Shown here: positions 1 to 30,000 of the stretch, one piece after another | Position numbering within the stretch: the first letter of the stretch is position 1 | How the letters are laid out: each line of letters starts with the position of its first letter | Made by a program: the position numbers and the translations under genes | Assembly: GCA_965637545.1 (NCBI GenBank) | Contig: OZ281498.1 | Span: forward strand, 12,648,001 to 12,712,000 | From: Phallusia mammillata | Taxonomy: Eukaryota | Reading direction: 5' to 3' | Length of the DNA stretch: 64,000 nt | Notes under the pieces: model-generated | The model's database searches: none | The model's input: the letters and a program-made list of their open reading frames with translations, nothing else | What the model was told of the DNA's origin: nothing

Positions 1-19
1 CAACTTCTGTGGGAGTGCT

Positions 20-415
20 GTACAGGCGTTTTCGTCCACCAGGTTGCATATTTAACAAAAATGTCGTTCAACTGGTGTTAATGTTAAACAAAAATACTAG
101 TTGTTTCTATCCATAACTTGTATTTTCGCTGACGTTTCGTCCACCAGAACGGTAGGACTTCTTCAGAGCAATGAATGACGAATGCAAGCAACAAGCGAAA
201 GGCGCAAGAACAGCGTGATACCATGAAAAATAATTATATTATAACAAAGGCCATCCGAAAAGAGTAGCGTCCATTGCAAAACGATGAAGCGGCACTAATG
301 TCCGAAATTTGATGGATTGGTCGGGCGTCTTGGGTGGATTCCTTTTCAAACCGTTGGTACATCGAGCTGTCCCCTAGGAGCGATTGAGCCTAAGTTCGTA
401 ATGTAGTCTATCCAA
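20..415 (-). mobile_element. Degenerate Penelope-like retroelement fragment (short RT N-terminal remnant joined to a terminal repeat carrying a hammerhead ribozyme)
   Basis: Minus strand ~410-325 reads, with two frameshifts, DYITNL/AQSLLGDSSMYQR/LKRNPPKT, resembling the DY..K...LL.D...Y..L...P segment upstream of Penelope RT domains. It is followed on the same strand by a minimal hammerhead motif (126-171). Boundaries are approximate. Confidence 0.6.
126..171 (-). ncRNA. Minimal type I hammerhead ribozyme (Penelope-associated type)
   Basis: Minus strand: uugcu-CUGAAGA-a-GUCC-uaccguucuggu-GGAC-GAAAC-GUC^agcga. Core CUGANGA and GAAA are intact; stem II GUCC/GGAC (extended by ACC/GGU); stem I uugcu/agcga; loopless palindromic ACGU helix III. 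Predicted cleavage between 131 and 130. Confidence 0.8.
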
Positions 416-853
416 ATCTGATGTGGTTTCGCTGATATGAAACCTCATAAAGCTGATACCAAATGTAATGAAGATTTAACGAGCTTTTAACAACAACCAA
501 ACTTTTATAAAAATAAGAGTAGTTTAGATTTTCTTTGCGTTTCCGGGTGTATTCCTTTCCGAAATTGGAAGAGTTAGCATTTAAAATGACGTAACAGGCG
601 TGATCGTGACATTACCAACCACAGTAACCACTGAAGCAGACTTAAAATCAATGGTCATGTAACAAATCGCATGTTTTGAATAAACAAGCGAAGAAATGAT
701 TCTATTTAAGGACCCAATGGTCTAAAAACTTAATCGATGCGCACTGGGTCTGTTCTGTAACCTATATCGCTTGTATGGAAATGTCTATTTTTTGTTAAAT
801 ATATTTGTCTTGTGTAGAACTTTGCTTAGTACTTGGAAGGTAAATTACTAAAA

Positions 854-3442
854 ATGGTTCTTCATCAACCAATATTATATTTTGAATGTGTTGATGCTGT
901 TTATGGAAGCTGCCGATCTCTGCCTCACAACAACAGGACTATGTACTGCTTGAATGCATGTGAACATATTCTTGGTTCAGTTCTTCGTCGCCATTGTGAC
1001 AGCAAGGGTAGAGAAAAGGTCCCTGCACAAACAGCTTTAATTCTGCATGAAATTGGACGTGTATACAGACTAAGAAGTCCTGACAAGATTAGTTTAATAA
1101 AAGCGGTTGTTCTGTTTAATGCCGCCCTTGTAAGGAAACCATCCAACGAGAATCAAATTAGAAACGATCTTTGTGAAATATGCTGTCACATTTTGGAACT
1201 TGCTGGTGCAAAACAAAAATCCGCCGATTTTACAATAGAAGTGAAAGCAATCAGTGAAAAAATGAAACAACTACGTAACTATGTTGCTGAAAACTTAATA
1301 CACTTAAAACCAGTTCATGAGTTGTGTTTGAATGAACCAAGAGCAGCAATCTTGGAGGATATTCAAAACCATCTAACATGTGGATATATTGATGCAATGA
1401 AACATATCATGGACTTTTGTGTCCACGCAATTGGAAGTCCTCCATGCGAGTATGCTTTGATTGGAATGGGGTCATTAGCAAAACGGGAAATAACGCCATA
1501 TTCAGATTTTGAAAGTTTCATTGTTTTGGAAGACCTAGACTATATTTCTGACGAATCCTATTCAGCGATCCTTAACTATTTTCGATGGACGGCGGTAATA
1601 TTTCAAATTGTTTTGGTTTGTATGGGTGAAACACTCACACGGTTTATGTGCATACGATCTCTTAACAACCCAACTCATCCTGGGGGTGATTGGTTTTATG
1701 ATGCTTTTACTCCATGTGGCATCTCCCCAGACGGTTTTGCCCCACAGGCAAGCAAAAATCCACTTGGGCGACAGGAAATGACTTTGGATAAACCTTGGAT
1801 AACTGAATTAATCAAACCGGTCAGTAAAATGCTTTTGTATTTGAAGCCACGACAAAACCTCAAGAATGGGTACCATCTTGCAGAAATGCTAACCCAGACA
1901 TGCTTTGTGGCTGGAAACAAAAATGTTTATGACAGCTATTGCGCAGGAGTGGAACAAGCATTTTTGCGATCAGACATGGATGCTGCAATAATGGAAATTG
2001 GCAAATATCTAAAACCTCTTCACACATTAACACGACTTCCGTCTGTACAAGACTTCAAGAAGTTTGACATGAAAAGAGTTATTTATCGAAGCACTACCTT
2101 GTTCATCTTGGCTATGAGAAGATTCTTTAAAGTTCGTGCTTTAGCATCATTTGATGTTGTCAGAGAGCTTGAGAGAAGACAAATTATTCCTTACAAATTT
2201 GCCCAAGATCTTGTATATGCTGTTGCGCTTGCATGCGAAGTTCGTCTTAAGATTTACAACCAACAAAACTCACAGGATGATCGGGTTGACACCATGAAAG
2301 ATAAAATGCAAACGACAATTGTATCAATAATGGGCAAGCAAGCTGCCATAATGTACTTTCGAATCGCCTGTCAGATTCAGCACTACATAGGAATTTTGAC
2401 AAATCGAATTCGAACAAGTGTTTCGTACAAAAAGGAAATATTGAAAGTTCAACTGACCGAGGTTTACATTCGCTACTCCCTGTGTCTTTATCAAGAAAGT
2501 TTGGAAATGTGTGATGTGTTTGGTTGGCTGACGAAAGAGCAATTCAAATGCGAGCCACAAATAATGTTTCTTGTTGGGTCGTGTTATTATAAACTTAAGG
2601 ACTACGACAAGGGATTACTGTTTCTGCAACGAGCAGAAGCAGACTTTGTGCCTGAAACTTCAGGAAACGACAAACTTTTGTGTCAAAAGATGATTATGCT
2701 TTGCTACGGGAAACAAGGAGTTGGGAACGTTGTAATTGAGAAGTTGTTCAAGAGCATCAAAACAATGATGGATCTCCCGGGCGAAAATTTAAACTTTTAC
2801 AAGACATTTTATATCAAAAAAGATGAACTTACCAATCGCAAAGACTTCATCAACCACCACGTTATTGCAAAACGCGAACATTTCTTTGGCAGCTGGTGTT
2901 ATAATATTCTAAGGGTCGATGAAGCTCTTGTGCACTTTGAACGTGAACTACAACTTCGATGCTTGCTCACATGCGACGCTTCAAGAGATAAATCTATTGC
3001 AGCTTGTCATCTAAGCATTGCTCTCTGTTTGGTTTTTAAAAACGAAATGCAGAGGGCTGTACCTCACATTAATGCATGCAGGAGCATTTATAAGGAACTG
3101 TGTTGGAAGGTTGGCATCAATAAACTATGTAAGGTGGAGTTTATTTTGGGCAGAACGTTCACGGCTCAAAAACTGCACCAATCAGCTTTGGATTGTTACA
3201 AGCGTGAGTTGCATTTTCGCAAGGAGATAGTAACAAATGAGGTTGACATCTATCCCTGGGATTTTCTAAGTCTTGGAACGTGCCATCTAAATATTGCTTT
3301 TGAAAGTTTTTACCTTAAAAAAGTTAAAGATAGCTATAGTCATGCCAAACAGGCTGAAGCGAATTACCTGCTGGCAAGGGTTCCTGATGCAATCTTGCAG
3401 GTTTGTCGGACTGTTATTCAAGCGAGCGAAGCACACTTGTAA
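854..3442 (+). CDS. Intronless nucleotidyltransferase (Pol-beta superfamily, GlnD/GlnE/DUF294-like) plus TPR repeat protein, copy A, 862 aa
   Basis: First ATG at 854 (the ORF track starts at TTG 833). Motif IGMGSLAKREITPYSDFESFIVL (~1460-1530) fits hGS-x10-DhE. A later GISPDG is a candidate third carboxylate. FDMKRVIYR...ASFDVVREL...ALACEVRLKIY resembles the helical substrate-binding domain following DUF294/GlnD NTases. TPR-like helices lie at the N-terminus (TALILHEIGRVY) and C-terminus (IAACHLSIALCL, FILGRTF, LSLGTCHLNIA). Confidence 0.85.
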   Translation: MVLHQPILYFECVDAVYGSCRSLPHNNRTMYCLNACEHILGSVLRRHCDSKGREKVPAQTALILHEIGRVYRLRSPDKISLIKAVVLFNAALVRKPSNENQIRNDLCEICCHILELAGAKQKSADFTIEVKAISEKMKQLRNYVAENLIHLKPVHELCLNEPRAAILEDIQNHLTCGYIDAMKHIMDFCVHAIGSPPCEYALIGMGSLAKREITPYSDFESFIVLEDLDYISDESYSAILNYFRWTAVIFQIVLVCMGETLTRFMCIRSLNNPTHPGGDWFYDAFTPCGISPDGFAPQASKNPLGRQEMTLDKPWITELIKPVSKMLLYLKPRQNLKNGYHLAEMLTQTCFVAGNKNVYDSYCAGVEQAFLRSDMDAAIMEIGKYLKPLHTLTRLPSVQDFKKFDMKRVIYRSTTLFILAMRRFFKVRALASFDVVRELERRQIIPYKFAQDLVYAVALACEVRLKIYNQQNSQDDRVDTMKDKMQTTIVSIMGKQAAIMYFRIACQIQHYIGILTNRIRTSVSYKKEILKVQLTEVYIRYSLCLYQESLEMCDVFGWLTKEQFKCEPQIMFLVGSCYYKLKDYDKGLLFLQRAEADFVPETSGNDKLLCQKMIMLCYGKQGVGNVVIEKLFKSIKTMMDLPGENLNFYKTFYIKKDELTNRKDFINHHVIAKREHFFGSWCYNILRVDEALVHFERELQLRCLLTCDASRDKSIAACHLSIALCLVFKNEMQRAVPHINACRSIYKELCWKVGINKLCKVEFILGRTFTAQKLHQSALDCYKRELHFRKEIVTNEVDIYPWDFLSLGTCHLNIAFESFYLKKVKDSYSHAKQAEANYLLARVPDAILQVCRTVIQASEAHL

Positions 3443-4351
3443 AGGTGTTGACGTTTTTTTGATACTTTTTAGAAACGTACAATGATCTTTTTATTGTCGG
3501 TCGACTTGACAAACATGTTTACAGGATTGTACGAACGGTTGCCAATGTGTTCACAGAAACGAATGAAAGCTAACATTTAGATATATACGTTAACTAGACA
3601 TGTTTCCAAAACCATAGGTTGTTTACTCCTGATCCACACTGTGGTAGCACTTTTTTCCTACTACGGTAGTTGTAGCATTACGGTCTTCCTAACAGCGTAA
3701 CTGCGTGGCTGGGTAACATAGCTGACAGGAAGTGATCAGGGCAGCATACCAACCAACAGGCTTATTAGTCTTGCTTGTGTTTTGGAAAAAGTTGTTATGA
3801 AGACTAATTTATGCACTTGTGCTTCTAAAATTTGTTGTACGTTAATATTCGTGATTCTGTTTATGTTTAACATAATTACGTAGTTAATAGAAAATAAATA
3901 AACATAAAATTCCGACAACGTTTCTTGGATTCTGGACCAATAAAGTCGCTCCAGTTTCCAATGTTGTTTTGCCTCATCGTGCACTAAACAAAGGGTTAGT
4001 TACTGTAAATGCAGGGTTTCTTTACTTAGTGTGTTTACTTCCACCTCCTGTGTATAAAATTAGGACTGGCTTGCAGGTTTTTGGCACCAATACGCGACGT
4101 CTTCCCGACGTCATTCGGCGCCAGTTTCACACAACTCTCTACTTTGTCAACGGTTTGATTTCAGCAACTGATATAGCTTTAGAGGGTATTGATAAAAAAA
4201 AACGATAGAAGTGGGGACAGGCATAATAGTAGTTACACAAACCAATTGGTTTTCCAGGTTTAAAATCAGATGGCAGTATTAATGTTTTTGTAATTTGCAA
4301 ATTTCAGCCGCTTGTAAAACTTTGTAGAAACAGTTTTGTGACAAAAAAACA

Positions 4352-5353
4352 ATGAATTTGCAAGCTTGCATTTTTCTCTGCTGCTGTTCACTGGAAGCAC
4401 AATTTCAACTTCCTTCATATAATGTGGACCAAGATCACATTACAATTAGTGGTTTCTCATCTGGAGGCTACATGGCAGTACAAATGCATGTGTCTTACTC
4501 GGCAACTTTTAGAGGCGTTGGAGTTATATCCGGGGGCCCATACCATTGTGCGTGGTCAGTTCCTGAAAGTGAACGTACATTCCCAGAGCTGGCCAATCCT
4601 CAAATTATCAACGTTACAAAAATTCAGGCAATAGCAGAAGGGCTATCAGAAAAAGGTCAAATCGATTCATTGGAACAACTTAAATCCACAAAAGTATTTT
4701 TGCTTGCTGGAAGCCTGGATACTTTAATTGTACCAGAAGTAGTGGAAAAAACAAGACAGTTCTACACCAAGTTTGTTAAAGACTCGAATATACATTTTGA
4801 AGAAATAAGAAGCGTGCACTGCTTTCCTACCATGAACTATGGTGCAGAATGCGAAGTCGATCACGTAAAGTTGATAAACAATTGTGCATACAATGCGGCT
4901 TTCAAGATTTTAAACCACATCGAGACGAATATTATTGAACCTCAAATGGAAACTACATCCACAGCACCACTTAGATTCAACATTAGTGAAACATTGTTAA
5001 CTTGGGTCAATCTGACAGCTATCGGTATGGACGAGATAGCTTATGTGTTTGTTCCTGACCAATGCAAATCACGGTCAATTAGATGTAAGCTGCACGTTGC
5101 ATTGCATGGCTGCACGCAAGGTGTATCAACCATCGGTGAGGACTATGTGCTTTATACTGGATATAACGAAGTTGCCGAAGCAAACAACATGATAATTTTG
5201 TATCCACAAGCAAAGATTATTCCAGATGTTAATCCATTTGGTTGCTGGGATTGGATGGGAACCACAGGTCCGTTATACGCAACTAAACAAGGGCCACAGA
5301 TACTAGTAATTATGAAACTTGTTCAACACCTAACTGGGATTACTATTTTGTAA
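4352..5353 (+). CDS. Secreted polyhydroxybutyrate (PHB/PHA) depolymerase-like serine hydrolase, extracellular type with N-terminal lipase box, intronless CDS, 333 aa
   Basis: Signal-peptide-like N-terminus MNLQACIFLCCCSLEA. Lipase box ITISGFSSGGYMAVQMHV. Candidate catalytic Asp (GSLDTLIVP) and His (SVHCFPT). Oxyanion motif LHVALHGCTQ, then ANNMIILYPQA and NPFGCWDW. This motif order matches fungal/bacterial extracellular PhaZ. AATAAA at 5403-5408. Confidence 0.88.
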   Translation: MNLQACIFLCCCSLEAQFQLPSYNVDQDHITISGFSSGGYMAVQMHVSYSATFRGVGVISGGPYHCAWSVPESERTFPELANPQIINVTKIQAIAEGLSEKGQIDSLEQLKSTKVFLLAGSLDTLIVPEVVEKTRQFYTKFVKDSNIHFEEIRSVHCFPTMNYGAECEVDHVKLINNCAYNAAFKILNHIETNIIEPQMETTSTAPLRFNISETLLTWVNLTAIGMDEIAYVFVPDQCKSRSIRCKLHVALHGCTQGVSTIGEDYVLYTGYNEVAEANNMIILYPQAKIIPDVNPFGCWDWMGTTGPLYATKQGPQILVIMKLVQHLTGITIL

Positions 5354-6103
5354 ATCATTCTCAGTTTCAGTCTGTAACATACAACCTGTGGCAGAATTTG
5401 TAAATAAATAATCGTCAATACAAAATTAGTGAAACCAAGGTAGTAACGTTAAATTGTTTTTTTGTGTAAACATTTTCCTTTAGATTTTATATAAATAATA
5501 AAATATGTCGACTTTTCTCCTGTTAGTCTATACAATTGAGTTGGGCCTCAGGGATGGAACACACAATGTAACATGCGAGAAACACAATATTTTGGTTTAG
5601 GACCACTGATAAACTCTAATTTTTGTCCACACAGTCATTTTTGTCACATGTTTTTTACATGACAATAAAAATGACCTGTATATACTTTTACAATGGTGCC
5701 TTTGTTGGAATGCTTATTGATTGCCAACTATAATTGCCGAAAATACAACGAGAAACGTGTCATACGGAAAATTTCCAACCTTATTTTCAACTTGTTTACA
5801 CTGTTACTGATCGAAGTTTTGTTGCTGCAACTTTGATAGGCGCAATAAATGTAGCTTAAATTTGTGTTGATGCTCCACAGATAGTAAAAAATATGACCAA
5901 GATAGGTTTGGTTTATATTTTAACATACAAAAGTATATACTTACCGATAGGCCGTTGCAATAGGGACTTGTGATGCAGTTTTGTTTAAAGAAAAAAAAAT
6001 AAGGACTTGTTTCTGGAAAAATAAACTTCGGTAGAAGAAGATCAAACGCCTAATTTTTATTTTTAAACTTGTTTCCGTCTTTTTTCTCTAATTTAGTGTA
6101 GCG

Positions 6104-6822
6104 CAGGGTTCTTCAACCTTTTTAGCTCAATCGCCCGCTTTCCAAGGCACGGACTCCTAATCGCCCCCCTATGAGATTGTTATTTGTATAAAATTTCGGC
6201 CTTTTGAGCAGATTTGGGTGGTTAGATTCACCTAGCACAGCGAAAGCTTCAGTCAACACCTAATTTAATTGCTACTACAACACGCAAGGTCCATTTCACG
6301 CAATTCAAACGCATCTGAGAACAATTTGTTACATCATAGACAAAACAATATTACGATTATGCGCAAACAATCGCTTTCTTTTGTTGACAACAATAGAGCA
6401 TTACTCGGCAGAGATGAATCCTAAATGATGCAAATACTTCGCGGTTTGGGGAGCGCTTGTAGGCCTTTAGGTAGAGTAAAAGCGAAAAAAGTTCAAGGTG
6501 AAGATTGTTGCCGTTGTATTTGAAAGTATGGGCTGTCACTATACATAGCCGCAATAAAGTGTCCCATGTGGCTAATTAAATGCCTAACCTTGGTTTCGAG
6601 ATCACAATGTATTCAAATAGCAGCACGTTTAATCTAATGTGTCCATTGTCCCTGGTGTTTGTTTGCAAGACGAATTATATCTACTTGTAAGTCAAAGTTA
6701 GCTGAGTCTCACAGTTATGGTACATATTTATACAATCAGTAATGTTGAAATCACCCTCTTTTGAAGTTAAATCGTCCCCCAACTTCCAAAATTGTCACCA
6801 TCGCCCCCGTTGAAGAACCCTG
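6104..6822. mobile_element. Non-autonomous hAT (Charlie/Buster-like) DNA transposon / MITE, 719 bp
   Basis: 14-bp TIRs CAGGGTTCTTCAAC / GTTGAAGAACCCTG; 8-bp TSD gtgtagcg (6096-6103) vs gtctagcg (6823-6830), 7/8 match; repeated subterminal ATCGCCC motifs. Confidence 0.9.
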
Positions 6823-6928
6823 GTCTAGCGTGACTTCAAACAACATGGTAAAAGCATTTTTTTTAAAATAAAGAGAACATCGAAGCATACTTTTTAGACG
6901 ACAAAAATTTTAATCTATTGAAACTACT

Positions 6929-9497
6929 TTACAAACGAGTTTTACATGTTTCAATAACAGTCCGACAACCCTGTAAGATTGCATCAGGAACGTTTGCAAG
7001 CAGATAATTTGTTTCAGCCTGTTTAGCATGACCGAAGCTATCCTGAAACATATTCAGAAAATAGTACTCAAAGGCGATGTTTTGGTGACATGTTCCAAGA
7101 TTTACCAAATCTGTTGGAAATGCATCAATATTTTTTGTTGTTTATCTCCTTACGAAAACGTAACTCACGCTTGTAACAATCCAAGGCTGATTGGTGTAGT
7201 TTTTGCGTCGAAAACGTTCTACCCAAAATAAGCTCCACCTCACATCGTTTATTGATGCCAACCTTTTTACACTCCTTATAAATGTTTCTACATGCATTAA
7301 TGTGAGGTACAGCCCTCCGCATTTCGTTTTCGAAAACCAAACAGCGAGCGATGCTTAAATGACAAGCTGCAATAGATTTATCTCTTGAAGTGTCGCATGT
7401 GAGCAAGCATCGAAGTTGTAGTTCACGTTCAAAGTGCACAAGAGCTTCATCGAACTTGAAAAAATCATAACATCAGCTGCCAAACCAATGTTCGCGTTTT
7501 GCAATAACGTGGTGGTTAATGAAGTCTTTGCGATTGGTAAGTTCATCTCTATTTGAAATAAAGTTTTTAAAAATTCCAACTTCCCTGTGATACACCATCA
7601 TTTTTTTAAGACAGTTGCTTGAATTTTCTTGATCTCCTTGTTTCTCATAACAAAGCATAATCATGTTTTGACACAAAAGTTTGTTGTTTCCTGAAGTTTC
7701 AGGCACAAAGTCTGCTTCGGCTCGTTGCAGGAAAAGTAATCCCTTGTCGTAGTCCTTAAGTTTATAATAACACGAACCAACAAGAAACACTATTCGTGGT
7801 TCGCATTTGTACTGCTCTTTCGTAAGCCAACCAAACACATCACAAATTTCCAAACTTTCTTGATAAAGGCACAGGGAGTAGCGAATGTAAACCTCGGTCA
7901 GTTGAACTTTCAATACTTCTTCTTTGTACGAAACACTTTTTCGAATTCGATTTGTCAAAATTCCTATGTAGTGCTGAATCTGACAGGCGATTCGAAAGTA
8001 CATTATGGCAGCTTGTTTGCCCATTATTGATACAATCGTCGTTTGCATTTTATCTTTCATGGCGTCAACCCGATCATCCTGTGAGTTTTGTTGGTTGTAA
8101 ATCTTAAGACGAACTTCGCATGCAAGCGCAACAGCATATGTAAGATCTTGAGCAAATTTGCAAGGAATAATTTGTCTTCTCTCAAGCTCTCTGACAACAT
8201 CAAATGATGCTAAAGCACGAACTTTAAAGAATCTTCTCATAGCCAAAATGAACAAGGTAGTACTTCGATAAATAACTCTTTTCATGTCAAACTTCTTGAA
8301 GTTTTGAACAGAGGGAAGTCGTGTTAATGTGTGAAAAGTTTTCAGATCGTTGTTTACCTCAGTTAAAACAGCATCCATGTTTGAATGAAGAAATGCTTGT
8401 TCCACTCCTGTGCAATAGCTGTCATAAACATTTTTGTTTCCAGCCACAAAGCATGTCTGGGTTAGCATTTCTGCAAGATGGTATCCATTCTTGAGGTTTT
8501 GTCGTGGCTTCAAATACAAAAGCATTTTGCTGACAGGTTTGATTAATTCAGTTATCCAAGGTTTATCCGAAGTCATTTCCTGTCGCCCAAGTGGATTTTT
8601 GCTTGCCTGTGGGGCAAAACCGTCTGGGGAGATGCCACATGGAGTAAAAGCATCATAAAACCAATCACCCCCAGGATGGGTTGGGTTGTTAAGCGATCGT
8701 ATGCACATAAACCGCGTGAGTGTTTCACCCATAGAAACCAAAACAATTTGAAATATTACCGCTGTCCATCGAAAGTAGTTAAGGATCGCTAAATAGGATT
8801 CGTCAGAAATATAGTCTAGGTCTTCCAAAACAATAAAACTTTCAAAATCTGAATATGGCGTTATTTCCCGTTTTGCTAATGAACCCATTCCAACCAAAGC
8901 ATACTCACATGGAGGACTTCCCATTGTGCGGACACAAAAGTCCATGATATGTTTCATTGCGTCAGTATATCCACATGTAAGGTGGTTTTGAATATCCTCT
9001 ATAATTTTTGTTTCTGTCGTCTGTTCTTTCAAACACAGCTCATGCAGCGACTGTAAGTGTTTAGCAACATAGTTGCGTAGTTGTTTCATTTTTTCACTGA
9101 TTACTTTCACTTCTATTGTAAAATCGGCGGATTTTTGTTTTGCACAAGCAAGTTCCAAAACATGACAGCATATTTCACGAAGATCTTTTCTGATTTGTTT
9201 CTCGTTGGATGGTTTCCTTACAAGGGCGGCATTAAACAGAACAACCGCTTTTATTAAACTAATCTTGTCAGGACTTCTTAGTCTGTAAACACGTCCAATT
9301 TCATGCAGAATTAAAGCTGTTTGTGTAGGGGCCTTTTCTTTACCCTTGCTGTCACAATGGCGACGAAGAACTGAACCAAGAATATGTTCACATGCATTTA
9401 AGCAGTACATAGTACTGTTGTTGTGAGACAGAGATCGGCAGCTTCCATAAACAGCGTCGATGCATTCAAAATATAGAATCGGTTGGTGGAGAACCAT
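6929..9497 (-). pseudogene. NTase-TPR paralog, copy B: truncated or pseudogenised (open 9497-7473, 674 aa; relic C-terminus continues to 6929)
   Basis: ATG at 9497 aligns with the ATG of copy A. In-frame TGA at 7473-7475 where A has TGG (HWFGS*CYDF vs HFFGSWCYNI). The frame then continues (VHFERELQLRC...) until a +1 frameshift near 7135-7145, after which IDAFPTDLVNLGTCHQNIAFEYY...CRTVIETCKTRL* ends at TAA 6929-6931, collinear with the end of A. Confidence 0.85.
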
Positions 9498-9540
9498 GTC
9501 TAATGCAACAGGCAATATATTTCCAAGTTTCACATATATT

Positions 9541-9680
9541 TTGTGCTCTGCCGCTGTAATTTTAAAATCAAATCCATACCAAACACAAAACCTCCCTGTG
9601 TACAGATCAAACCTACGTAGCGACTGTTTCCGCAACGTAAGTCATTATTTAAACCCACGTATTATTTTGTCACAGTTGTA
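9541..9680 (-). promoter_or_regulatory. Upstream element of NTase-TPR copy B, homologous to 13245-13385 (candidate core promoter/5' UTR)
   Basis: Collinear identical blocks shared with 13245-13385: acaaaacct, cctgtgtacag (9595-9605), actgtttccgcaacgtaa (9623-9640), ttattttgtcaca (9662-9674). Regulatory function is inferred from position only. Confidence 0.55.
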
Positions 9681-10528
9681 AAGCAGAATGCGGAAGCGTT
9701 GTCTGTTAAGCAGTGAGTATAACTAACACAAGATAGGTTGGCTAATTTCGGGTAGATGCCGCGCTCAATTACTTAAAAATAAATGCAGCTTTGGTCATGA
9801 ACTTGGCCGATTGGTACGGCGTGCCTGACCCATATACAGACGCAAAAAAACTGATGGGGATTCGTCCCCGGGAGTGTCCTGAGTTCGAACGCCGTGAAAC
9901 AAAATATAATGAAGGTTAGAGCTTTTGTAACAGGGTTGGTCCGAGGTTCATAATAAGGTTAACAAAAAAATCAACCGAAAACCCAGTTCTTAATGTTGAA
10001 TTTAGTTCCTAACCCTATACCAGTCACACTGCTAATTGAATTAAACTGCGCTCTTTACGCCATTTATCAGTATTTGGTAAACCGTTTCTCGTTTGAGTTC
10101 TTGTGTTAGTAGCTCTACCAAGCAGTGAAGTGTATTTAGGAGGTACGCTAGAAAGAGGCGTTCCTCGAAGTGAAAAAGTGGCGCTCCTCCAAAAAGGAAA
10201 ATGCGCTGTTTGCAGTTTGCTATGTGTTTGTTCAGTTTAAAATAAATAGCCCAAAGATTAAAATGTTTAATTTTGACATATTGGCTGGAATAAATGAGGG
10301 CTCAAAAACGTAAAACTATGTCATATTGTACAATGCATTTTTTTATTTGCCATCAATTACTAGTATCGAGTATGGGCTTACATTGACCTTTATGACTGAA
10401 CGAAGCAGTCACTGAAAAGAACAGCATAAGTCAACCAAAAATAAAAACTTAACACTGCATTATTAAAAGTAATACATTGTTTTGGGGCCAAAATGAAGAA
10501 AAGAGTAAGTATCCAATGCATAAAGTTG

Positions 10529-12838
10529 TCAACACAAATAGGACAATAGAAGAGACAGAAACTCGGCGATAATCTCTTGTGAATGAATGTCTTCCTGAGT
10601 TCTTATGGTGGTAATTTCCCATGTGTCTATAAACGTTACATACGAAATATCGGCAAACATTTCGCGCATAATCTGGTCAAACCGATACAAATACCATTCA
10701 CTTGGCAAAAACGTCATTAAACGTTTAAACCTAATTCCTGTTCGCAGGAAAAACCGCACCCCCGAATTTCTGTCCTATAGATCCTTTATGGCAACAAGCC
10801 GTTGAATAAAACCCGATGGATCATAGAGGGCAAAGTGGGCACCAATATTCAACACTACCAAAAAATCACCTGAAGAAGGCATTCCATCCAAAGTGTCGAC
10901 TATATATGGCTTGCTACCTGGTGGACCGGGATTGTGCAATGGCAAACCATGAGCTTTGTAATAAATTGTAATGTTATTTTTGTCATGTCGACCTTTGCGT
11001 GGTTGTGACCAGGCAACCGAATTATCAGGTCCAGTGTCTGTAAGTTTCATTTCAGCGACTAGATATGAATACCACTGTCTCATTGTGGAATCTCCAATTA
11101 AGTAGATTGTTCGGTTGGCCAGACAATCCATTGCGTTGGTCAAATTGTGATATGCCATGTTACATCGCAAGAACTTCCATTTTCCATCCAAGTAATAACC
11201 ACTTGGAAGATTGCTTGACGCTCTTCGAATAAGTTTTTTACACGGCGGTCGATCCGGGGAAGAATTGTCTGTTTGTTTGCTGGCGAAGATGAATTGACTT
11301 TGAATTGGCATTTCTCGGTTAATCTTTGTATTGTATAGTTCTTTACGGGCTGGAAATCTTGATGGTATTGTTATCCTTTTCGACCAAACTAAGTTTGTCG
11401 GGCAAGTCTCGTTGATGAGTTTGCGACACTGCCATGACGCGCCAACGTGTGGGTTTGAAAATTCGCACACATCGGAAACACTGTCGCTAAACAAAACAAA
11501 GCAGTTTAAAACAGATTTTTTACAGGAACAATTATGACATTATGCAATCCGTTTTAAGCAACAGATAACACGCAAAATTAAAGGCATTTTTTAAAAAATT
11601 CTTACAATGGTACTTGTTTGTTGTTCACTTTTATTTCACACATTATCATTATATTTTCTTAACCGCTCTTACAACTTTTGTTTGGTTTTTGCATTAGTCC
11701 ATTTCTTTAGTTTTCGTTTTATTACTGCCGTATATTTTCGCTCTTGTTACTTTTGATTCAATTTTTTTTAGTTTATACCTCGTTAAAACTGTTGACCACC
11801 GGCGAAACGTAACAAAACAAATTCGTATTTTACAGAGTTTTTTAATTTCAAAGCATCAAACATCTGGTAAATGAGACAAATCGAGATTTACTTTTAAATT
11901 ATAAACCTCACGTAAACAGTTGTTTGTCTTGAATTTTCTTTTGTTGACTTAGTTATAAATTGTGTCAAACTTCTTTGATCCGAAAATCTGTAGCATTCAA
12001 TACCTTAGATGCACGTCACATTCCACTTTGCTCCCTGAAGGATAAGTACCCAGAAACCTGACGATATCAGCAGATCTGGAATTTGTTCTCAACGCAAGGT
12101 CAACCACAGCCTCGCTAGGATGTACAAGCTCTACATCAAGTTTACAGAGACCGGGCCACGGCATAACAGTACTCCAAGTGTATTTCCCATTGGCGTGGTC
12201 CAAAATGTCAACATATATTCCATCTTGCACATTCGAATTATTTCTCATCAATCTGCGAAAATTAGAAAATCAACTTAAACCCCTTTATGATTTATTTGAA
12301 CAGGTCTTTATTGTGTTTTCAGGGTTGACCTTTTGCGTAATAAAGGTGTACAAACAGATTTTGCAAAATGTATTACGTCTTGAATGACTTTTAAACAAAT
12401 AATGGGTCAACGGTTTAGGTTTCAAAAACGTTCTGTATACCTTGCTCTAAAGTAGTCACCACCATACATTTTGTCATTACCATTGTAATCTCTGGCTTGG
12501 ATTTCACCTGTCACTTTTTCACCGACAGTACATGTGCTTTTGTCCACAGTGACCAAGACATGACGTGGGTCTGTTGACGTAGTTATTGGTAAATTCATTT
12601 TAATTTTCCCGGATTCAATGTTGTGTAGAAATTGCTGAATCCCAGGCAAGTATTTCCTCCATTTATAACTTCCAAAAATATTTTTTCGTTGAACGTCAGG
12701 CATCTTATTGCCACTGCTAGTCCAACCGGTGAAATATTTGGATTTAATCACATTCGTGTACTTCCAGTATATGGTTGATAGAAGCATCATTGCAGTGAAA
12801 AGAGTCACGAAACGCATGAAAATTATTCGAACTCTCAT
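10529..12838 (-). pseudogene. NXPE: NXPE family (neurexophilin/PC-esterase, SGNH-like) gene with one in-frame stop; 3 coding exons
   Basis: Exons 12838-12441, 12252-12004 and 11486-10529, with GT-AG boundaries and consistent phase (1605 nt). N-terminal TM anchor, then Ig/filamin-like ARDYNGNDKMYGGDYFRAR and DHANGKY...LVHPSEAV. GDSTMRQW motif; C-terminal IDTWE...EDIH...LLSYLC*. In-frame TAG at 10775-10777 (AIKDL*DRNSGVRFFLRT). Confidence 0.85.
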
Positions 12839-13244
12839 TTTGATTTCTTTTCCTGAAACAAAATAACAAGTAACAACCACCGTTAAGGTTTACTGCAAAA
12901 ACTGCTGCTAAGTCAGTCTGTACTTTTTGTATGATTTCTTTAAGCATCCTTATCTCACGAAACAAACAAAATAAAAATATTGTTTTCCTTCACTATAGCC
13001 GAGGTATAGTTTAATGCAACATACAGTATAAACACCATTTTCAGGCTGCTTCAAATGGTAAGTCTAACTGAATAAACACACACACAAAATGTGTGTTTCA
13101 TTTAGTTCCAATAATTTTAATCAAATAAAACAGAAGCCGGAAAACCTGATTTTAACTGTTATCATAACACATTCAAAACAACGGAGTCGGTTCATGGAAA
13201 ACCATCTCTAACCCAACCGATAGTAAACTGCACCCTGCAGTTAA

Positions 13245-13385
13245 TTTGTGCTGTAAAACAAACACTAAACCGATACTAAATACAAAACCTGCGAGGCCTG
13301 TGTACAGCTCAGATATTCACAGCCACTGTTTCCGCAACGTAATTCGAACATTAGCTACACTCGCGCTTATTTTGTCACATTTATT
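13245..13385 (-). promoter_or_regulatory. Upstream element of the NXPE gene, homologous to 9541-9680
   Basis: cctgtgtacag 13297-13307, actgtttccgcaacgtaa 13325-13342, ttattttgtcaca 13367-13379; same order and near-identical spacing as the copy upstream of NTase-TPR B. Confidence 0.55.
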
Positions 13386-15067
13386 TTTGATTTTTAGAAA
13401 TCACAACCAACGTAAATTTGTTGTTATGTAAGCCCGAAATTCATTTAAACTAAAAAATACGAATCTTTGGCTTATAAACTGCCTAGATGTCAAATCTTTC
13501 CATATAGTTTCAAGACCTATAAAGCAAACCAAAAAATGCAATTCCTTTAAATCAAAGCTAAAACTTATATCTCTTTAAACTCTTCATTGCATGAATTTCA
13601 TGTAGCTATGAACTGCTGGCACTAATTCACCACCTGTGCACGTTTGCCCATCAAAGTCGGTTTAAGGTCAAGTGAAAATGTCATCACAGACTACACGAAT
13701 TAGCCTTAGCTTCGGGGTGACCGACGAATCTGTCTTCTTCGCAACATCAAATTTTCCAAAATAATATAAAATTACTCGGAAACAGCGGCAGATTATCAGA
13801 AAAATATATTTTTTGAAACAAAATTATTAATTTCGCCTGCTTATGAAAGACATCCTTATTTTCCGTCCAATAGAGAGAAAAAAACATTAAAAGCAACTTT
13901 GAATTTACAAGTTAAATATTAAACTATATTCGTCGGCGAAACCAACTAGTGCCAATAGAAACAATGGAGAAGTTGCTCAGCAAAGACCAATGCTAACAAA
14001 CTGCAAGACAAGGACCAATAAAGGTGTGACCAACAAGCAAACAATGTATAGTGATGAAAAAGGTGATGACGTATATAGGCGATAAACATGTTCACTATCA
14101 TTTTGGAACCGTTATTTCTTCGGAAGCTGAAGGTCATCTGAACAAGTAGGACGCTGTTTCATGCACAGTAATGAGACATTTAAATTAAAATATTTTTATA
14201 CATTAACACTCATGGGCGTCCGCAGCGGGGGGCAAGAGGGGGTGCGTGCCCTGTTACTGGATGTGTCAAAAAGCCATTATGTAATATCTTCCCTGTATCT
14301 GTTGTTACATCTGATGAGGTTTGTTTATGTAAATCCCACTTCCGTTAAAAATCGTTTGCCAACCTTCCACATACTTCAGTAATAGTTAATATTGTGCTCA
14401 TTGTATTATTTTGCTACACTGGAATTGGCAAGAATGAGTAGGACAATCAGAAACTTACAGCCAATCAGCGACATGCAAAATGAAGTCATATTTATACATG
14501 AGGTTAAGATTACAAATTATTACTTCCGTTAGATAGCACTGTTCAACAAAAAAGAACTGCAGTCACGCTTTACTGAACAGGCGCGTGGCAGAGATTTTTT
14601 TCCCTTTGGCAAGATTGCCGCGCCAGACAAGAGCGTGTTTTGTAGAAGCAGGCCGGAGTAGTTGAGGGAAGGTGTGCAAAACAGAGGGACTCAATGTACG
14701 CTGTGGAGATTTCGTGTAGCTTATCATAGCTATGAAGTAGTTTCCGTAGCCAGATTTGTCAATGGCAGTATATGACACTGTGCAGTCAGAATGATACATT
14801 TGACGCTGAATGTCGACCCATATCATTCAGTATTTCCTGTGAACTAGGCGTTACTCATATTGTAAACAATGCAACGCTTTGGCTATTGGCCATTGTTGAT
14901 TAACAAAACCTGTTCTAAGAATAATGTTATAATACGTTACTGGTACAAGTTTGTGTTCCAGATTAGGCGGATTTTACTGTAACAAAGAGACTGTGGATAC
15001 ATTTTGAGCAACGTTATTGTTGCCCAGAACGTGGATTATTGAGACAATCATATTTCATCAGTGTGCC

Positions 15068-18000
15068 ATGAATTCACACAATATTTTTGGTCAACTTTGG
15101 GCTAACAGTTTGGTGTACTTCAGCCTTGTTCATATGTTTGTCATTGTTTCTGCAAACGTTGGTAAGTAATTTTAATTGTTCATCTTGACAAGATTTGTAA
15201 TAGTAGTAAGCTACAACAGCTAGTAACCATGTTATGTTGATAAGTGAAATAGTTTATAGGGCATACACTGAATGCACTTTAGTTATGCTTGTGGTACTGT
15301 GGTGTGTTAAATCAATTAAGCGTTACATGCAAACTAATGGCAATTCAAACTAACATTGGGTTCTTGCCTCGTTTGAATACCGATCTTATGGCTAAACTTT
15401 TTTGGCAAAGAATTCCATTTGTGTCAACAAATTGAATGTAAGAATGTAAGGGTAAATGAATATAAAATCCGTATGTTTACTTTTTTCGTGTGACCCTTTC
15501 TGATGTGATCTTTAATTTGCAGAAGAGTTGTACGATACGAAATCTCGAACAAGCGACCTGCTGTGGACGAAATATCCGGAAAGCGGCGGTGTAAGTTTAT
15601 TTGTTGTGGAAAAACGTATTACTCGCTGTAGCTTTACCCATGGGCGGGCCGCGTTCCACAGAACAACATGCGGCGTGAGAATCGACTCTATTACCACGCG
15701 GCATATCATTAAGTTAATTAGAGCAGCAAATTTGTGGAAACGGACACTAGCCGAGACGAACTTTCTTGTGGACGCGCATTTGTTGTTTCGAAACAATTAA
15801 ATGGTGTCATAGATTTCTAATGTTACTAATTAAAGACATAAACTATGCTGGACTTCAAAGATGCAATGTTTTACAATCGAATACAATTGTAATACATTTT
15901 TTTACAATTCACGCAATATCATGTGAATCTTTCTTTTAGTGTGTCGCCAATATAAGAAATAGAAATACCATGGTGCCTTAGATTGATCACACTTTTTTCC
16001 CTACTAGTGGGAAGAAGTAACCGGGTTGAGTTTGGAACGGGATTCAATTCGATATCACCAGGTTTGCAACGCGGTTACCAACCCAAGCAATTGGATACGA
16101 TCTCCCTACATTGAATCCAAGTAAGCTCATTTGCTACGACACTGGCGACTCTGGCCGACGCTTTGTTTACGATTTGTGCTTCCGTCCGCTCTAGATAACA
16201 GCCTGACACTTGGTTTTATTGGCTGTCAAAAGAGGTCTTGCACCGGACGAATTACTGTGTCATGTTTGCTTGGTTTAGTTCGATCTTCGATGTGGCTAAG
16301 AATTATTTTCAGAATTCTAATCTTATACAAAAATACCTTTTACATAATTTTCATTATTTTAAGTCCACTTTATAATGTAAAGCAACTTTTCATTTTGTGG
16401 AAATGCTGCTTCCTAGTTTGCGTTTTAAGAATGCCATTATTGTTCGGGTCAGATTTCGAGAATTTATAGTGTTACTAAAATACCGTGTATAATTTTACTG
16501 GTGTTACTAAGTCCGTGTAGGGTAGGGGTGTCCAAACTGCGACCCGCGGGCCAAATGCGGCCCCCGACGGCATTTTAAGTGGCCCGCGGCTGTTTTTTTT
16601 AAAATTGTTTTGCGTATGGCCCGCCATAGTTTGGAACTTTGGATTAAGTTTTTGGGTTTTAGCGATGCTACATCACGCAAAAGCTTTCCATGGAACTTCA
16701 TTTACCCGCGGTAAAAAGGAAGGTGCTGACTCAACAAAATCACAAAATTTCCTTAAATCCTGTAAATTTGTGTCTTAATTCTGAAAAAACGTTGGCCCGC
16801 GGGCATCTTTACCTGGTAAAATTTGGCCCCCGTTAAAAAAAGCTTGGACACCCCTGGTGTAGGGTGTTAAAATGCATTCCTGTGCCAACCTACTCTTTTT
16901 TTCAGGGGTGCGAAACGAGCTTATATTGACGTGGAGTTTTCTATGGTAAAATGTGAAGAGTTGCAAACTGGATGTAGCGAAACTTTTAATCTCTTCTACT
17001 ACGAGTCGGATACCGATCAGTCTTCTAGCACTTTCCCACCATGGAGGGAAAACCCGTATGTGAAGATTGACACGATAGCAGCAGGTGAACGGTTCAGCAA
17101 CATCGAGTTCAGCAGAGAAGAAGGAATGAACCGCAAAACTTGGACACTAGGTCCGCTTACCAGGTACGGAAATTTTATCACAATTTTCCTGTTCTTCCAG
17201 CTTTTTTGTTATAGTTGTTCTGGAAATTGTTACATTAAAATAAATAAAACGTTAATAAATTGGAAAGAACGAACTGTTTTGATTTGAAGCACCTCCATTA
17301 AAAGCACTGTTTAGCATTTCCACTGCATAAAAAAAACTGTTTTTAGTCCTGTAGGTAGGAAACATTAGAGCAGGTATTATATATTGATTGTATGTTTCCA
17401 TTCATGTTCCATCGATTGTTGACCACCAGGCCCATTATGTCTCAAAATGACGGTATTCCAACAGGCGCGGGTTTTATCTGGCAGCTGAGGACAAGGGGGC
17501 TTGCATGTCGTTAATGAGAGTGCGCGTCTATTCTTATTATTGCCCGAATGTGACAAACTCGTTGGCCAAGTTTCCTCGAACTGTTGCTGGTAACGACGTC
17601 GCTTCTCTGGTGGAAGTTCCGGGAAAATGTGTCCAGTATGCCAACTCCACTGCATTGGAAGGTAAAGTGTCAAATTTTGTTAATTCCAATACAAAATGAT
17701 TCATTAGCTCAAAATATTACCCATGTTGCCTAATAAATGAATTCATAAAAATTGGTTGTATCTAAAAACTAAACATCGGATTGTTTCTTATTTAGCATCC
17801 TTGCTTTGTGTAAATGCTTTGCCAGCAGCTAACGTTACAACGTACAGTAACCCATGAAGCAATAATGACCTCTGCTATCGGCAATTATACTCACAATCAC
17901 ACGGCCTTCCCTTTTCATCTAACAGCACCTCGTTATTACTGCAACAGCAACGGCGAATGGAAGGTCCGCACTGGAGTGTGTCACTGCAAGCCGGGTTATC

Positions 18001-27000: not shown

Positions 27001-30000
27001 TGCGGCACAAATGCTTTAATTATAAAAAAAATATGGACAGTTTTGTATGCCCAATAGCTGCATGTCCATCAAACCGTTCTCAATTTTGGTATGATGAACT
27101 GGATCAAGTGGACGGTGGCGATATTCGTGTTAGCGATTTCTTATCATATCTTTAGCCTACGCATGTTGATCCCATTCGATTCTGCTTCTACTGGTCAAAA
27201 ATATAGCAATTATGGGTCCCCTTCCCTGAAGGGGACACATATTGTTTTTGTCCGTATTTTTTTTTCTTTGTTCTTTTTTCTGTCTAACTCTGGCTTGTGA
27301 GACCCGTTTGGTCAAGAAAAAGTGCTTGAAATTTATTGAAATTTGGACATAGATATTAATCCAAACTTGGTCCACCTGAAGTTTGACCCCAAATTACCCA
27401 GCGGTTCACCCACAGGCCCCCGAAACGTAAAATTTTTAACGCTGGTTTGTAACGCTCGTTTGGTCAAGAAAAAGTGCTTTAAATTTATTGAAATTTGGAC
27501 ACATGTTAGATATTAATCCAAACTTGGTCCACCTGAAGTTTGACCCCGATTGACCCAGCGGTTCACCCACAGGCTCCCGAAACGTACATTTTTTAACGCT
27601 GGTTTGTAACGCTGGTTTGGTAAAGAAAAAGTACTTCAAATTTATTCAAATTTGGACATATCTTAGTTATCAACTTGATTCTCTAGAAGTTTGACCCCGA
27701 ATGACCCAGCGGTTCACCCACAGGCCCCCGAAACGTAAATGTGTCTAACGCTCGTTTGGTCAAGAAAGACACTGTAGGCAGAAGTACCAAGAGAGTAACT
27801 CACTGGTTTACGATAGCGGGAGGGCTCAGCTTGACGTCGGACAGACGTTCTACGAGACGTCGTTTCAGTGATTAGAAATCAGCTGTTGTGCACAGCAATG
27901 CTATGTCATTTTATTAAGTTATCACTCACGTTTTTAGTTTTGGCGAAGGTTTTACACCTATGACGTGATTTAAACCTAATAACCGTACTTCGGTTTTGTA
28001 TATGTCAAGCAAAACTTTGTTAATCGAAGTAAAGATGAAAAAGTTAACTTGACTTTTTTGCCAAATAAATGTTTTTTTAAATGCTCGTTGTCAGGTTGGC
28101 CGCCGCATGATCACGGGTTACTTAAGGTCAACTAGTAGGTATTACAAACACAGTTCAGACCTTTCTTTCGTCATAACGTAGCGTTTTTTTTTTGACAATC
28201 AATTTAGGAGTCAATACTCATGTATAAATTAGGCTTAACAGTATTGTTGAACACCAAGGACGGCGTGCTATTGAAAACGGTGTCAAAAGTCAAACAGTCG
28301 TTTGGCGTGTGCACACTGAGAGGTTACTACAGGTCAATGGTACTTGTGTCAATATCTGGATCAAAGCAAGAGATTAGATTAAAGTATTTGTTACGTTTTT
28401 TAATGTTTTTGTAATTACATGACAATAAGAGTGCAAAAAGAATACGAACAATTTTTTGTTGTTGGGTTAATGCTTTCTAAAAATTTGTCCTTGAGAATCT
28501 AAAAATCACCGCAACATTTGTTTACTGTAAATCTGCACAAACGCGCGTGTGGGGACCCATTTGTTTTTGTTTACAAAAACAATCATATGTGTAGATCAAA
28601 TGATGTGTATAGTAAATTGCTAAATATCGTATAGAATATATAAAATGGAAGTATATCAGAAAGCCACTCTTCTAGTTTCACGGTAATTTTTAAATGTCTT
28701 GGAAATCAATTTGTTGACAATACCAAGTCTATGTCGCTTAAATCTAGTCACATTGTAACATAAAATTCTTGCCACATCGATGTCACATAAATTTCTTGCG
28801 GCATGCCGAAATTACTTTCCGTGAAAAAATATTTAATATAGGCCCGATAAAAACGGTTTCTACCACACGACAAAACAAAATGGGTTTTATAAATTCACTG
28901 CCAAGTGTGCTCCAATTTCGATATGCATTGGGACAAAATTGGATTTATTTTTAGGCCCATTGCCAAAAATTCAGGTGGTCACTTTTCTTAACTATGGTGA
29001 CACAAGGGTATTCATAAAATGCGTTTAACAAACGGAAGCCGAAAACTTTATAATATGTAGTGCTCGAAAACTCCACGTGACACGACATAACTTGTCGGCG
29101 ATCATGGAAGTCCTTTCGGTTTAGTAATCGCGCGCACGACTCACAATATAGCACAAGCGCGTAATCGCCAAGTTATAAAATATTAATGAGTTTCCAGTGG
29201 CCAAAATACGCTTATAAATCGCTGCTGGGCGCCCGTGTCGCTTGACTTGTTTGCATGATTGAGTTGCTCTGTTGTGAGCCGCTTGTTAGTGACGTGCGTC
29301 GAGCGATCGGGCAATCCATCACTTCCTAAATCAGGTCTATGTGATTCAATTTGAAGTCTGGTGTTCAGCTTGAACTAGGCTGCTCGCCGAATCTGTGGAA
29401 GTAAAATGAAGAACGGATACAACGGAAGCACGGTTATGTCACGCAAAAACCTTAACGTTAAACCGCTTTCAGGCTGTATACTCATTTTAATAAACGAAAA
29501 GTATTCGCATGTACAGTTTTTTAAAAACAGTTTAGTCGCGGACTGTGAACGCCCAGTTAGTTTGTCTTGTTTACGGTTAGTTACAAAAAAACCAATAAAC
29601 AAAGAATTATAAAATTAGCACTTGTGTTAGTGCTATGTACAACAAAAAAATGGCTTTCGGTACTGAGACTCCTATTTCTCTTCATTTCTCGTGCTTTGTT
29701 TTAGAAAAAAATGGGTTCTAACAGGTAGCCGAGGTTAAATGTCATGGTTTAGTCGGTTGCATACGACGAGCTCCTTGCATTATTCACCACGGGAGAGTTT
29801 GTTGATCCTGTTTGTCTGATAAGGGCGCATTAATAGGCTTATTGGGGGACGCTATTGCCAAAGGGTAAGTGCATTAAACAATCGGGTTTTCCATCACACA
29901 CCGGAGACAACCTCCGCTATGGGACCAACTAATTCGCAACGTCAATGTGTCGCAAGTACTAGCCTCGATGCGCTCACGTTTGTGTCCTGGTTTTAGTTTT

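What the first reader, a model, noticed from the sequence alone, without database searches (positions are those of the whole stretch)
854..9497. Paired intronless GlnD/DUF294-like nucleotidyltransferase-TPR genes: candidate undescribed animal nucleotide-signalling or protein-NMPylation (immune-like) system
Seen: two intronless paralogs with an intact hGS..DhE NTase motif (GMGSLAKREITPYSDFE), a helical domain like the one following GlnD/GlnE/DUF294 NTases, and TPR arrays on both sides, in a region where the Eph genes are intron-rich. Established: GlnD/GlnE-type NTases are bacterial protein uridylyl/adenylyl-transferases; the same Pol-beta fold underlies cGAS, OAS and CD-NTase second-messenger synthases; TPR arrays are common ligand sensors. 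Inference: this sensor-plus-enzyme architecture, with local duplication, variable repeats and copy decay, looks like an innate-immune effector family. It may be horizontally acquired from bacteria or endosymbionts, and on activation could NMPylate targets or make a nucleotide signal. I know of no characterised animal protein with this architecture.
Basis: partly seen in the sequence, partly recalled or inferred. Interest (0 to 1): 0.85.

Follow-up and report, generated by a model that had tools for sequence, protein, structure and literature searches.

The report
Sea-squirt protein-tagging enzyme gene pair
A sea-squirt-like animal carries two facing copies (one whole, one broken) of a gene that joins a bacterial-style enzyme for sticking nucleotides onto proteins to a variable binding arm; the same gene family occurs in bacteria that live inside host cells, and I found no study of the animal members.

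Summary
The observation mostly holds. Copy 1 (854-3442, +) is an uninterrupted 862-aa ORF. Copy 2 (9497-7473, -) stops at 674 aa, and its TPR tail is broken. A third, vestigial 5' stub lies at 13170-13382. The core passes Pfam DUF294 and folds (pLDDT 91) like Legionella DrrA (Z 24.5) and GlnE (Z 21-22), which are protein AMPylases; no cGAS/OAS structure was listed. The GS-x10-D-x-E motif, a probable third acid (D293) and K407/R412/R464 are nearly invariant from tunicates to amphioxus, octocorals, Neochlamydia (NEX2, described 2014) and Holosporaceae. The gene sits inside a tunicate clade. Animal members are not one clade (p-AU 0.017), so genes crossed between animals and intracellular bacteria long ago; the direction is unresolved. 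The two copies show patchy divergence confined to the CDS, which fits gene conversion. Corrections: there is one true TPR array (C-terminal), and no change in repeat number between these copies. Three probable RNA assemblies hold no contig of either copy, while the neighbouring PHA depolymerase is covered. Best reading: a TPR-directed protein NMPylase of a birth-and-death family, probably in host-microbe conflict. Activity and immune role are untested. The scan met this family repeatedly elsewhere in this genome.

The parts
854..3442 (+). Copy 1: uninterrupted CDS, 862 aa; N-terminal helical module + DUF294-type NTase + helical substrate-binding domain + TPR arm
926..1297 (+). N-terminal helical module (res 25-148), conserved across tunicate members (47% mean pairwise identity); TPR-like hairpins but no Pfam TPR hit
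1379..1969 (+). Pol-beta-type NTase domain (about res 176-372); G206-S207 at 1469-1474, D218 at 1505-1507, E220 at 1511-1513, probable third acid D293 at 1730-1732
2042..2398 (+). Helical DUF294_C/GlnE-type (HEPN-like fold) domain, res 397-515, with invariant K407, R412, R464; no Rx4-6H RNase motif
2426..3439 (+). C-terminal TPR solenoid (res 525-861), LGN/CTPR-like; most divergent part of the family (31% mean pairwise identity, 16% to copy 1)
7473..9497 (-). Copy 2: CDS of 674 aa with the complete NTase core (D at 8847-8849), ending at an in-frame stop within the TPR arm
6928..7472 (-). Broken remainder of copy 2's TPR arm (after the stop; frameshift near 7143); similarity to copy 1 ends at the position of copy 1's stop codon
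9498..9677 (-). Upstream region of copy 2 (acceptor-like site near 9555), duplicated in front of the third stub
13170..13382 (-). Vestigial third copy: about 180 nt like copy 2's upstream region plus the first ~12 codons (ATG 13205-13203), already interrupted
   Evidence: E 1.4e-11; score 56; maximum of 2000 shuffles 39
4352..5353 (+). Neighbour between the copies: single-ORF extracellular type-2 scl-PHA depolymerase; transcribed; no evidence of a functional link

Best explanation
Copy 1 encodes a cytosolic protein nucleotidyltransferase of the GlnE/GlnD/DrrA (DUF294) branch. Mg2+ bound by D218/E220/(D293) and the basic residues of the helical domain would position an NTP and transfer NMP (AMP most likely, UMP possible) to a hydroxyl side chain of a target protein. 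The fast-diverging LGN-like TPR groove would pick the target or gate the enzyme, as the TPRs of FICD do for BiP. The gene belongs to a very large tunicate expansion that evolves by birth and death and by gene conversion. The family is shared with putative host-directed proteins of intracellular bacteria (Neochlamydia NEX2, Holosporaceae), and the most likely biological role is host-microbe conflict: marking or inactivating microbial or host proteins on infection. Shown here: fold, conserved active site, family breadth, non-monophyly of animal members, copy decay, mosaic divergence. Inferred: catalysis (about 0.85), a protein substrate (about 0.65), the TPR as the specificity module, and a defence role (about 0.5). 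Copy 2 is a truncated, probably dying copy; the 13.2 kb stub is a dead one.
For: Pfam DUF294 above cut-off; 110/111 homologues hit DUF294 and 84/111 SidM_N. The AlphaFold core has pLDDT 90.8 and pTM 0.90. Best structures are DrrA 6yx5 (E 2e-8; Z 24.5, 288 residues aligned, rmsd 3.7) and GlnE 1v4a/3k7d (Z 22.1/21.3); antibiotic NTases reach Z 8.1 or less and no cGAS/OAS entry is listed. The DrrA motif is G98-S99-...-D110-x-D112 plus D150 (PMC7815794); here G206/S217/D218/D293/K407/R412/R464 are 100% and E220 259/260 conserved among 260 rows, and they are conserved in chlamydial, Holosporaceae, octocoral and amphioxus members. dN/dS is about 0.2 between the copies in the core. 653 homologues of similar length were found, and 36-45 distinct uninterrupted cores in one other set of host-associated assemblies. 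The TPR arm is the most divergent part. No signal peptide or clear TM helix. NEX2 proteins combine F-box/OTU, DUF294 and TPR (PMC4209131).
Against: No activity assay. No contig from three probable RNA assemblies (three studies) lies on copy 1, even at 90% likeness, which would also catch copy 2's conserved tracts; the neighbouring depolymerase is covered. Canonical bacterial CBS/cNMP-DUF294 proteins are also close in fold (TM about 0.7), and I found no substrate for them in the papers searched, so the fold alone does not fix the substrate. Copy 1 departs from family consensus in one patch (for example Y385 where 93% have D). The third catalytic acid is assigned by position, not by superposition. 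No immune-linked domain or neighbour is conserved.
Confidence: 0.48

Rival explanations
1. The enzyme makes a diffusible nucleotide signal or modifies a small molecule or nucleic acid when the TPR arm binds a ligand, working like cGLR/OAS/CD-NTase or Hailong HalB, though from a different branch of the fold.
For: It shares the Pol-beta superfamily. TPR-fused cGLRs exist (bioRxiv 10.1101/2023.02.22.529553). Bacterial DUF294 domains are fused to CBS/cNMP/Cache sensors, and I found no substrate reported for them.
Against: Structure searches put only protein AMPylases at Z above 20; HalB scores Z 6.0 and no cGAS/OAS/CD-NTase appears in the top 50. No PADLOC hit for the window protein; no Mab-21 or OAS Pfam hit in 111 members.
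Confidence: 0.14
2. It is a protein NMPylase used in the animal's own regulation (development, allorecognition, trafficking) with no role against microbes.
For: Strong purifying selection on the core; LGN-like TPRs typically bind host peptides; DrrA's target is a host Rab.
Against: Dozens of paralogues per genome, broken copies and stubs, patchy distribution among animals and sharing with endosymbionts are unusual for housekeeping regulators. No expression in three assemblies that cover the neighbouring gene.
Confidence: 0.17
3. The family may be functional, but this locus is a silent or dying cluster: copy 1's intact frame and low dN/dS are kept by gene conversion from active paralogues, not by its own function.
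For: No RNA contigs. Homology between the copies starts at the ATG and ends at the stop. Third-position differences are strongly clustered (p 2e-4). Copy 2 is broken and copy 3 is a stub. Copy 1 carries most of the derived core changes (end branch 0.092 vs 0.004).
Against: An open frame of 862 codons with dN/dS below 0.5 in every segment, including the diverged patches. Assembled contigs drop rare transcripts and cannot show absence.
Confidence: 0.17
4. Endosymbiont DNA or contamination assembled into an animal contig, or a very recent transfer.
For: No introns in the CDS; bacterial relatives exist.
Against: GC 38-39%, like the flanks; continuous DNA coverage across gene and flanks in a public run; nested with 100/100 support among Clavelina and other tunicate-type copies, far from any bacterial row; only 25-35% identity to bacterial relatives.
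Confidence: 0.02

Closest known systems
Neochlamydia NEX2 family (F-box/OTU-DUF294-TPR; Domman et al. 2014, PMC4209131) and Holosporaceae/Parachlamydiaceae DUF294-TPR proteins
   Same: DUF294 core in mid-protein plus C-terminal TPR array; same family-specific motifs (the TPRGxxxDG-KxPLG region, K-x3-YR, R-L-x2-Y-x5-Q); lineage-specific expansion; 25% identity over 334 aa, E 2e-20 to Neochlamydia P0415; 35% over 200 aa to Holosporaceae P0267
   Different: Encoded in an animal genome; no F-box, OTU, ankyrin or methyltransferase domain; forms its own long-branch tunicate clade; NEX2 is itself uncharacterised biochemically
Legionella DrrA/SidM ATase domain (Rab1 AMPylase)
   Same: Best structural match (Z 24.5); GS-x10-D-x-D/E motif and two-domain NTase + helical arrangement; K/R residues of the helical domain align
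   Different: 14-15% identity; no GEF or P4M domain; second acid is E; a TPR arm instead; host-encoded and multi-copy
GlnE (GS-ATase) / GlnD (PII uridylyltransferase)
   Same: Same fold (Z 21-22); UniRef labels Clavelina and Branchiostoma homologues 'Protein-PII uridylyltransferase N-terminal domain-containing'
   Different: Far below NCBIfam cut-offs (12-16 bits vs 500-800); no HD, ACT or duplicated AT/AR layout; not nitrogen regulation as far as can be told
Bacterial CBS/cNMP-DUF294-DUF294_C proteins
   Same: Pfam DUF294 above cut-off; TM about 0.7
   Different: Sensor is a C-terminal TPR arm, not N-terminal CBS/cNMP; extra inserted segment in the NTase domain
FICD/HYPE (animal TPR + AMPylase)
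   Same: Logic of TPR-guided AMPylation of a protein target (PMC12409994)
   Different: Unrelated catalytic fold (Fic); single-copy and ER-resident
cGAS-like receptors / OAS
   Same: Pol-beta superfamily; expanded in invertebrates; some TPR fusions
   Different: Different branch of the fold; not recovered by any sequence or structure search here

Membership tests
Pol-beta NTase superfamily | hG[GS]-x9-13-D-h-[DE] motif | tested here: met
   G206-S207...D218-F-E220 in both copies; invariant in the family
Pol-beta NTase superfamily | Third acidic metal ligand on a later strand (DrrA D150, GlnE D753) | tested here: inconclusive
   D293 is invariant and follows a short strand in the model; D283 is also nearly invariant; no residue-level superposition was available
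DUF294 / GlnE / DrrA branch | NTase domain followed by helical DUF294_C/GlnD_UR_UTase-type domain, overall fold of GlnE AT and DrrA ATase | tested here: met
   Z 24.5, 22.1 and 21.3 over about 290 residues; DUF294 above cut-off; DUF294_C in 60/111 members
DUF294 / GlnE / DrrA branch | Transfer of NMP to a protein side chain | not testable with these tools
   needs a biochemical assay
GlnD or GlnE orthologue | Full-length equivalog score; HD/ACT domains (GlnD) or duplicated AR/AT (GlnE) | tested here: not met
   12 bits vs 625 cut-off; domains absent
DrrA/SidM orthologue | SidM_N above cut-off plus GEF and P4M domains | tested here: not met
   SidM_N 15.5-17.9 bits vs 27; no GEF or P4M
NEX2-like DUF294-TPR proteins of intracellular bacteria | Mid-protein DUF294 plus C-terminal TPR array and shared core motifs | tested here: met
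NEX2-like DUF294-TPR proteins of intracellular bacteria | N-terminal F-box (+/- OTU), as in NEX2 proper | tested here: not met
   no such Pfam hit at E up to 1; separate clade in trees
cGAS/OAS/CD-NTase | Mab-21/OAS1_C-type fold and profile match | tested here: not met
   absent from Pfam, PADLOC, Foldseek and VIA results
HEPN RNases | R-x4-6-H motif in the helical domain | tested here: not met
   R464 is followed by Y468; H at +5 to +7 in only 20/260 rows
Innate-immune multigene family | Expansion, decay, fast-diverging binding module | tested here: met
Innate-immune multigene family | Expression in immune tissue or induction on challenge | tested here: inconclusive
   no contigs on the gene in three probable RNA assemblies of unknown tissue

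The most novel reading that the evidence does not exclude
A third class of animal protein AMPylase/UMPylase besides FICD and SelO: a GlnE/DrrA-fold enzyme exchanged with intracellular bacteria, amplified to dozens of TPR-diversified copies in tunicates, amphioxus and octocorals, and used as a sensor-enzyme that tags microbial or host proteins in defence.
Probability: 0.35. Interest if true: 0.85.

Novelty: new variant of a known kind. Interest (0 to 1): 0.62.

Why it matters
A 2025 review names FICD and SelO as the eukaryotic AMPylases and gives only bacterial examples (GS-ATase, SidM) for the NTase fold (PMC12409994). A large, conserved animal family with the DrrA/GlnE active site would add a new writer of this modification in invertebrate chordates and corals. 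It also gives a testable case of an effector-type enzyme shared between intracellular bacteria and animals, and it would help assign a function to the uncharacterised chlamydial NEX2 proteins. This locus adds an intact copy that is easy to express and a clear record of conversion and decay. It shows no expression, so it may not be the best member to assay.

Tried and rejected
Single-protein scan of bacterial genomes found nothing; the profile scan found only Holosporaceae 'Namur' because the pattern is narrow. Viral contigs and BFVD (best E 0.3) gave no relative, so a viral origin is unsupported. PADLOC gave nothing for the window protein. Rfam at E up to 0.5 over 1-16000 gave nothing. A conserved 'microbe-facing cluster' (NTase-TPR + PHA depolymerase + NXPE) was rejected: neither neighbour occurs in any fetched related locus. 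HEPN RNase activity was rejected on motif grounds. I first took the 9570-9677/13267-13382 repeat for an NXPE promoter or small element; it continues into an ATG and the first codons of the NTase-TPR gene, so it is a stub of a third copy. The careful 92-row tree did not finish, so one search is the quick tree; the 34-row careful tree left out the unassigned metagenomic rows and most tunicate and amphioxus rows. No outgroup was available, so the direction of transfer was not inferred. The taxonomy look-up failed on a quote mark and was not repeated. The sigma-70 scan is irrelevant to an animal. Four paper searches for animal members found none, nor did the two DUF294 searches; the library lacks most subscription papers. 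Copy 2 was not read through or joined across its breaks; its pieces were searched apart.

Full report
What is in the sequence. The window is animal DNA at 33-46% GC, with no N and two tandem, intron-rich Eph receptor genes from about 16.9 kb onward. Copy 1 is an uninterrupted ORF from ATG 854 to stop 3442 (862 aa). Copy 2 runs on the minus strand from ATG 9497 to an in-frame stop at 7473-7475 (674 aa). Recognisable TPR sequence continues past that stop, shifts frame near 7143 and ends near 6928. The two copies face each other around a single-ORF PHA depolymerase (4352-5353). They align at 89% over 2.6 kb, from the ATG to the position of copy 1's stop codon, with no similarity in the 350 nt on either side. 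About 180 nt of copy 2's upstream region and its first ~12 codons recur at 13170-13382, upstream of the NXPE gene (E 1.4e-11; stub score 56 against a maximum of 39 in 2000 shuffles). The locus therefore holds one whole copy, one truncated copy and one vestige.

How the copies diverged. Divergence is a mosaic. Long tracts have dS 0.07-0.19 and dN/dS about 0.2. They are interrupted by short patches (res 141-175, 366-400, 623-680 and the C-terminal end) with dS 0.4-0.7 and dN/dS 0.3-0.5. Third-position differences are far more clustered than chance (p 2e-4). Synonymous sites rise with non-synonymous ones and homology stops at the CDS ends, so I infer gene conversion between older paralogues rather than a plain recent duplication. 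A public DNA run covers the gene and its flanks and shows joints at two places where the copies diverge (2720-2821 and 3229-3329), consistent with copy 2 being real.

What the protein is. Pfam DUF294 passes its cut-off in both copies; SidM_N and DUF294_C are weak in the window but hit 84 and 60 of 111 homologues. The family profile's best PDB sequence match is DrrA. The predicted core (pLDDT 90.8, pTM 0.90) matches DrrA 6yx5 at E 2e-8 and Z 24.5, and both GlnE domains at Z 21-22. Antibiotic NTases and HalB are at Z 8.1 or less, and no cGAS, OAS or CD-NTase is listed. DrrA uses D110, D112 and D150, and GlnE uses D701, D703 and D753 (PMC7815794). Here D218 and E220 are the first two acids. D293, invariant in 260 rows and placed after a short strand, is the probable third (inferred). 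K407, R412 and R464 of the helical domain are also invariant. The helical domain has a HEPN-like fold but lacks the RNase motif. The full-length model (pLDDT 85) shows a short N-terminal helical module, the enzyme, and a ~14-helix C-terminal solenoid that matches LGN/Pins TPRs. Mean pairwise identity in the family is 62% for the NTase, 49% for the helical domain, 47% for the N-terminal module and 31% for the TPR arm. There is no signal peptide or clear TM helix.

Who has it. The length-limited search found 653 homologues, and the core search 748 clusters at E 1e-10 or better. Named members are Clavelina lepadiformis and Branchiostoma species, and the octocorals Paramuricea, Xenia and Dendronephthya. 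One set of gene-sparse, host-associated JGI assemblies holds 36-45 distinct uninterrupted cores among the 80 loci returned; I could not verify its host, but its proteins group with Clavelina. Bacterial members come from intracellular lineages: Holosporaceae 'Namur', Neochlamydia, Parachlamydiaceae and Rhabdochlamydiaceae, and unnamed gene-dense contigs. All keep the same active-site residues. The Neochlamydia proteins match the NEX2 expansion described in 2014 as F-box/OTU-DUF294-TPR (PMC4209131).

Origin. The window's copies sit inside a tunicate clade with 100/100 support on a long branch. Three of four octocoral rows fall inside the bacterial group in the larger tree. Holding all animal rows together is rejected (p-AU 0.0165; unrooted, long branches present, and the test was run after a first tree had been seen). 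So the family crossed between animals and intracellular bacteria more than once, or was inherited and lost in a complex way. The tunicate acquisition is older than the split among the sampled tunicates, and the direction is not shown. Contamination is excluded by composition, coverage and tree position.

Expression. In three probable transcriptome assemblies from three studies, contigs cover the depolymerase gene and a repeat at the window start, but none lies on 488-4173, even at 90% likeness. Contigs cannot prove absence, and tissue and library type are not on record. Low, tissue-restricted or inducible expression stays possible, but there is no positive evidence.

Mechanism. I commit to a TPR-directed protein NMPylase: an Mg-dependent transfer of AMP (or UMP) onto a protein bound or signalled by the variable TPR groove. 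All solved matches above Z 20 modify proteins, and TPR-guided AMPylation has a precedent in FICD (PMC12409994). A defence role is inferred from expansion, decay, faster divergence of the binding arm and sharing with host-associated bacteria; it was not shown. The rivals are a nucleotide-signal synthase (0.14), a non-immune regulator (0.17) and a silent locus maintained by conversion (0.17).

Novelty. The enzyme class (GlnE/DrrA) and the bacterial DUF294-TPR layout are known. I found no paper on the animal members in the searches made, and databases carry only automatic names. I rate it a new variant of a known kind. The scan has already noted this family at many other places in this genome. 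Those notes agree with the DrrA/GlnE reading, for which I had the SidM_N hit beforehand. I did not test their genome-wide counts of 55-80 copies.

Noticed in passing
window 4352-5353 (+): Single-ORF extracellular type-2 scl-PHA depolymerase, above the NCBIfam cut-off (304 vs 280 bits) and covered by contigs in three probable RNA runs. Animal PHA depolymerases, including chordate ones, are already described (PMC13642032).
   Followed up: partly
window 100-426: Very high-copy repeat (DNA depth over 27,000 vs about 300 for flanks; also in RNA-type runs). At 134-166 (-) it has a CUGAAGA-stem-CGAAAC motif like the minimal hammerheads of Penelope-like elements (from my own knowledge); 0.15 expected by chance, fold z 0.13, no Rfam hit.
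   Followed up: partly
window about 10600-12838 (-): NXPE-family gene with introns (NXPE4_C E 4e-28), lying between copy 2 and the third-copy stub.
   Followed up: no
window about 16870-39700 and 50020-63660 (+): Two tandem Eph receptor genes with many introns (ligand-binding, FN3 and kinase exons); the second runs off the window end.
   Followed up: no
window 27305-27758: Three tandem copies of a 157-nt unit, intronic.
   Followed up: no
L009 and L010 (contig Ga0210059_1004792): Another host-associated assembly also has two family copies on one 21.8-kb contig in tail-to-tail orientation; no depolymerase or NXPE gene was found in the fetched DNA.
   Followed up: partly
L087:8001-21568; L085:4179-12857; L003:334-8450: Bacterial contigs carry several DUF294-TPR/ankyrin genes side by side, next to NB-ARC or pentapeptide proteins, AbiEi/AbiEii and an integrase: effector-island-like arrays.
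   Followed up: no
proteins P0121-P0123, P0271, P0308, P0391, P0404: Architectural variety in relatives: three tandem NTase cores in Branchiostoma; a fusion whose precomputed Pfam accessions (PF00431, PF00057, PF06462) I read as CUB/LDLa/tectonin-type (P0271); and methyltransferase-DUF294 fusions in chlamydiae.
   Followed up: no
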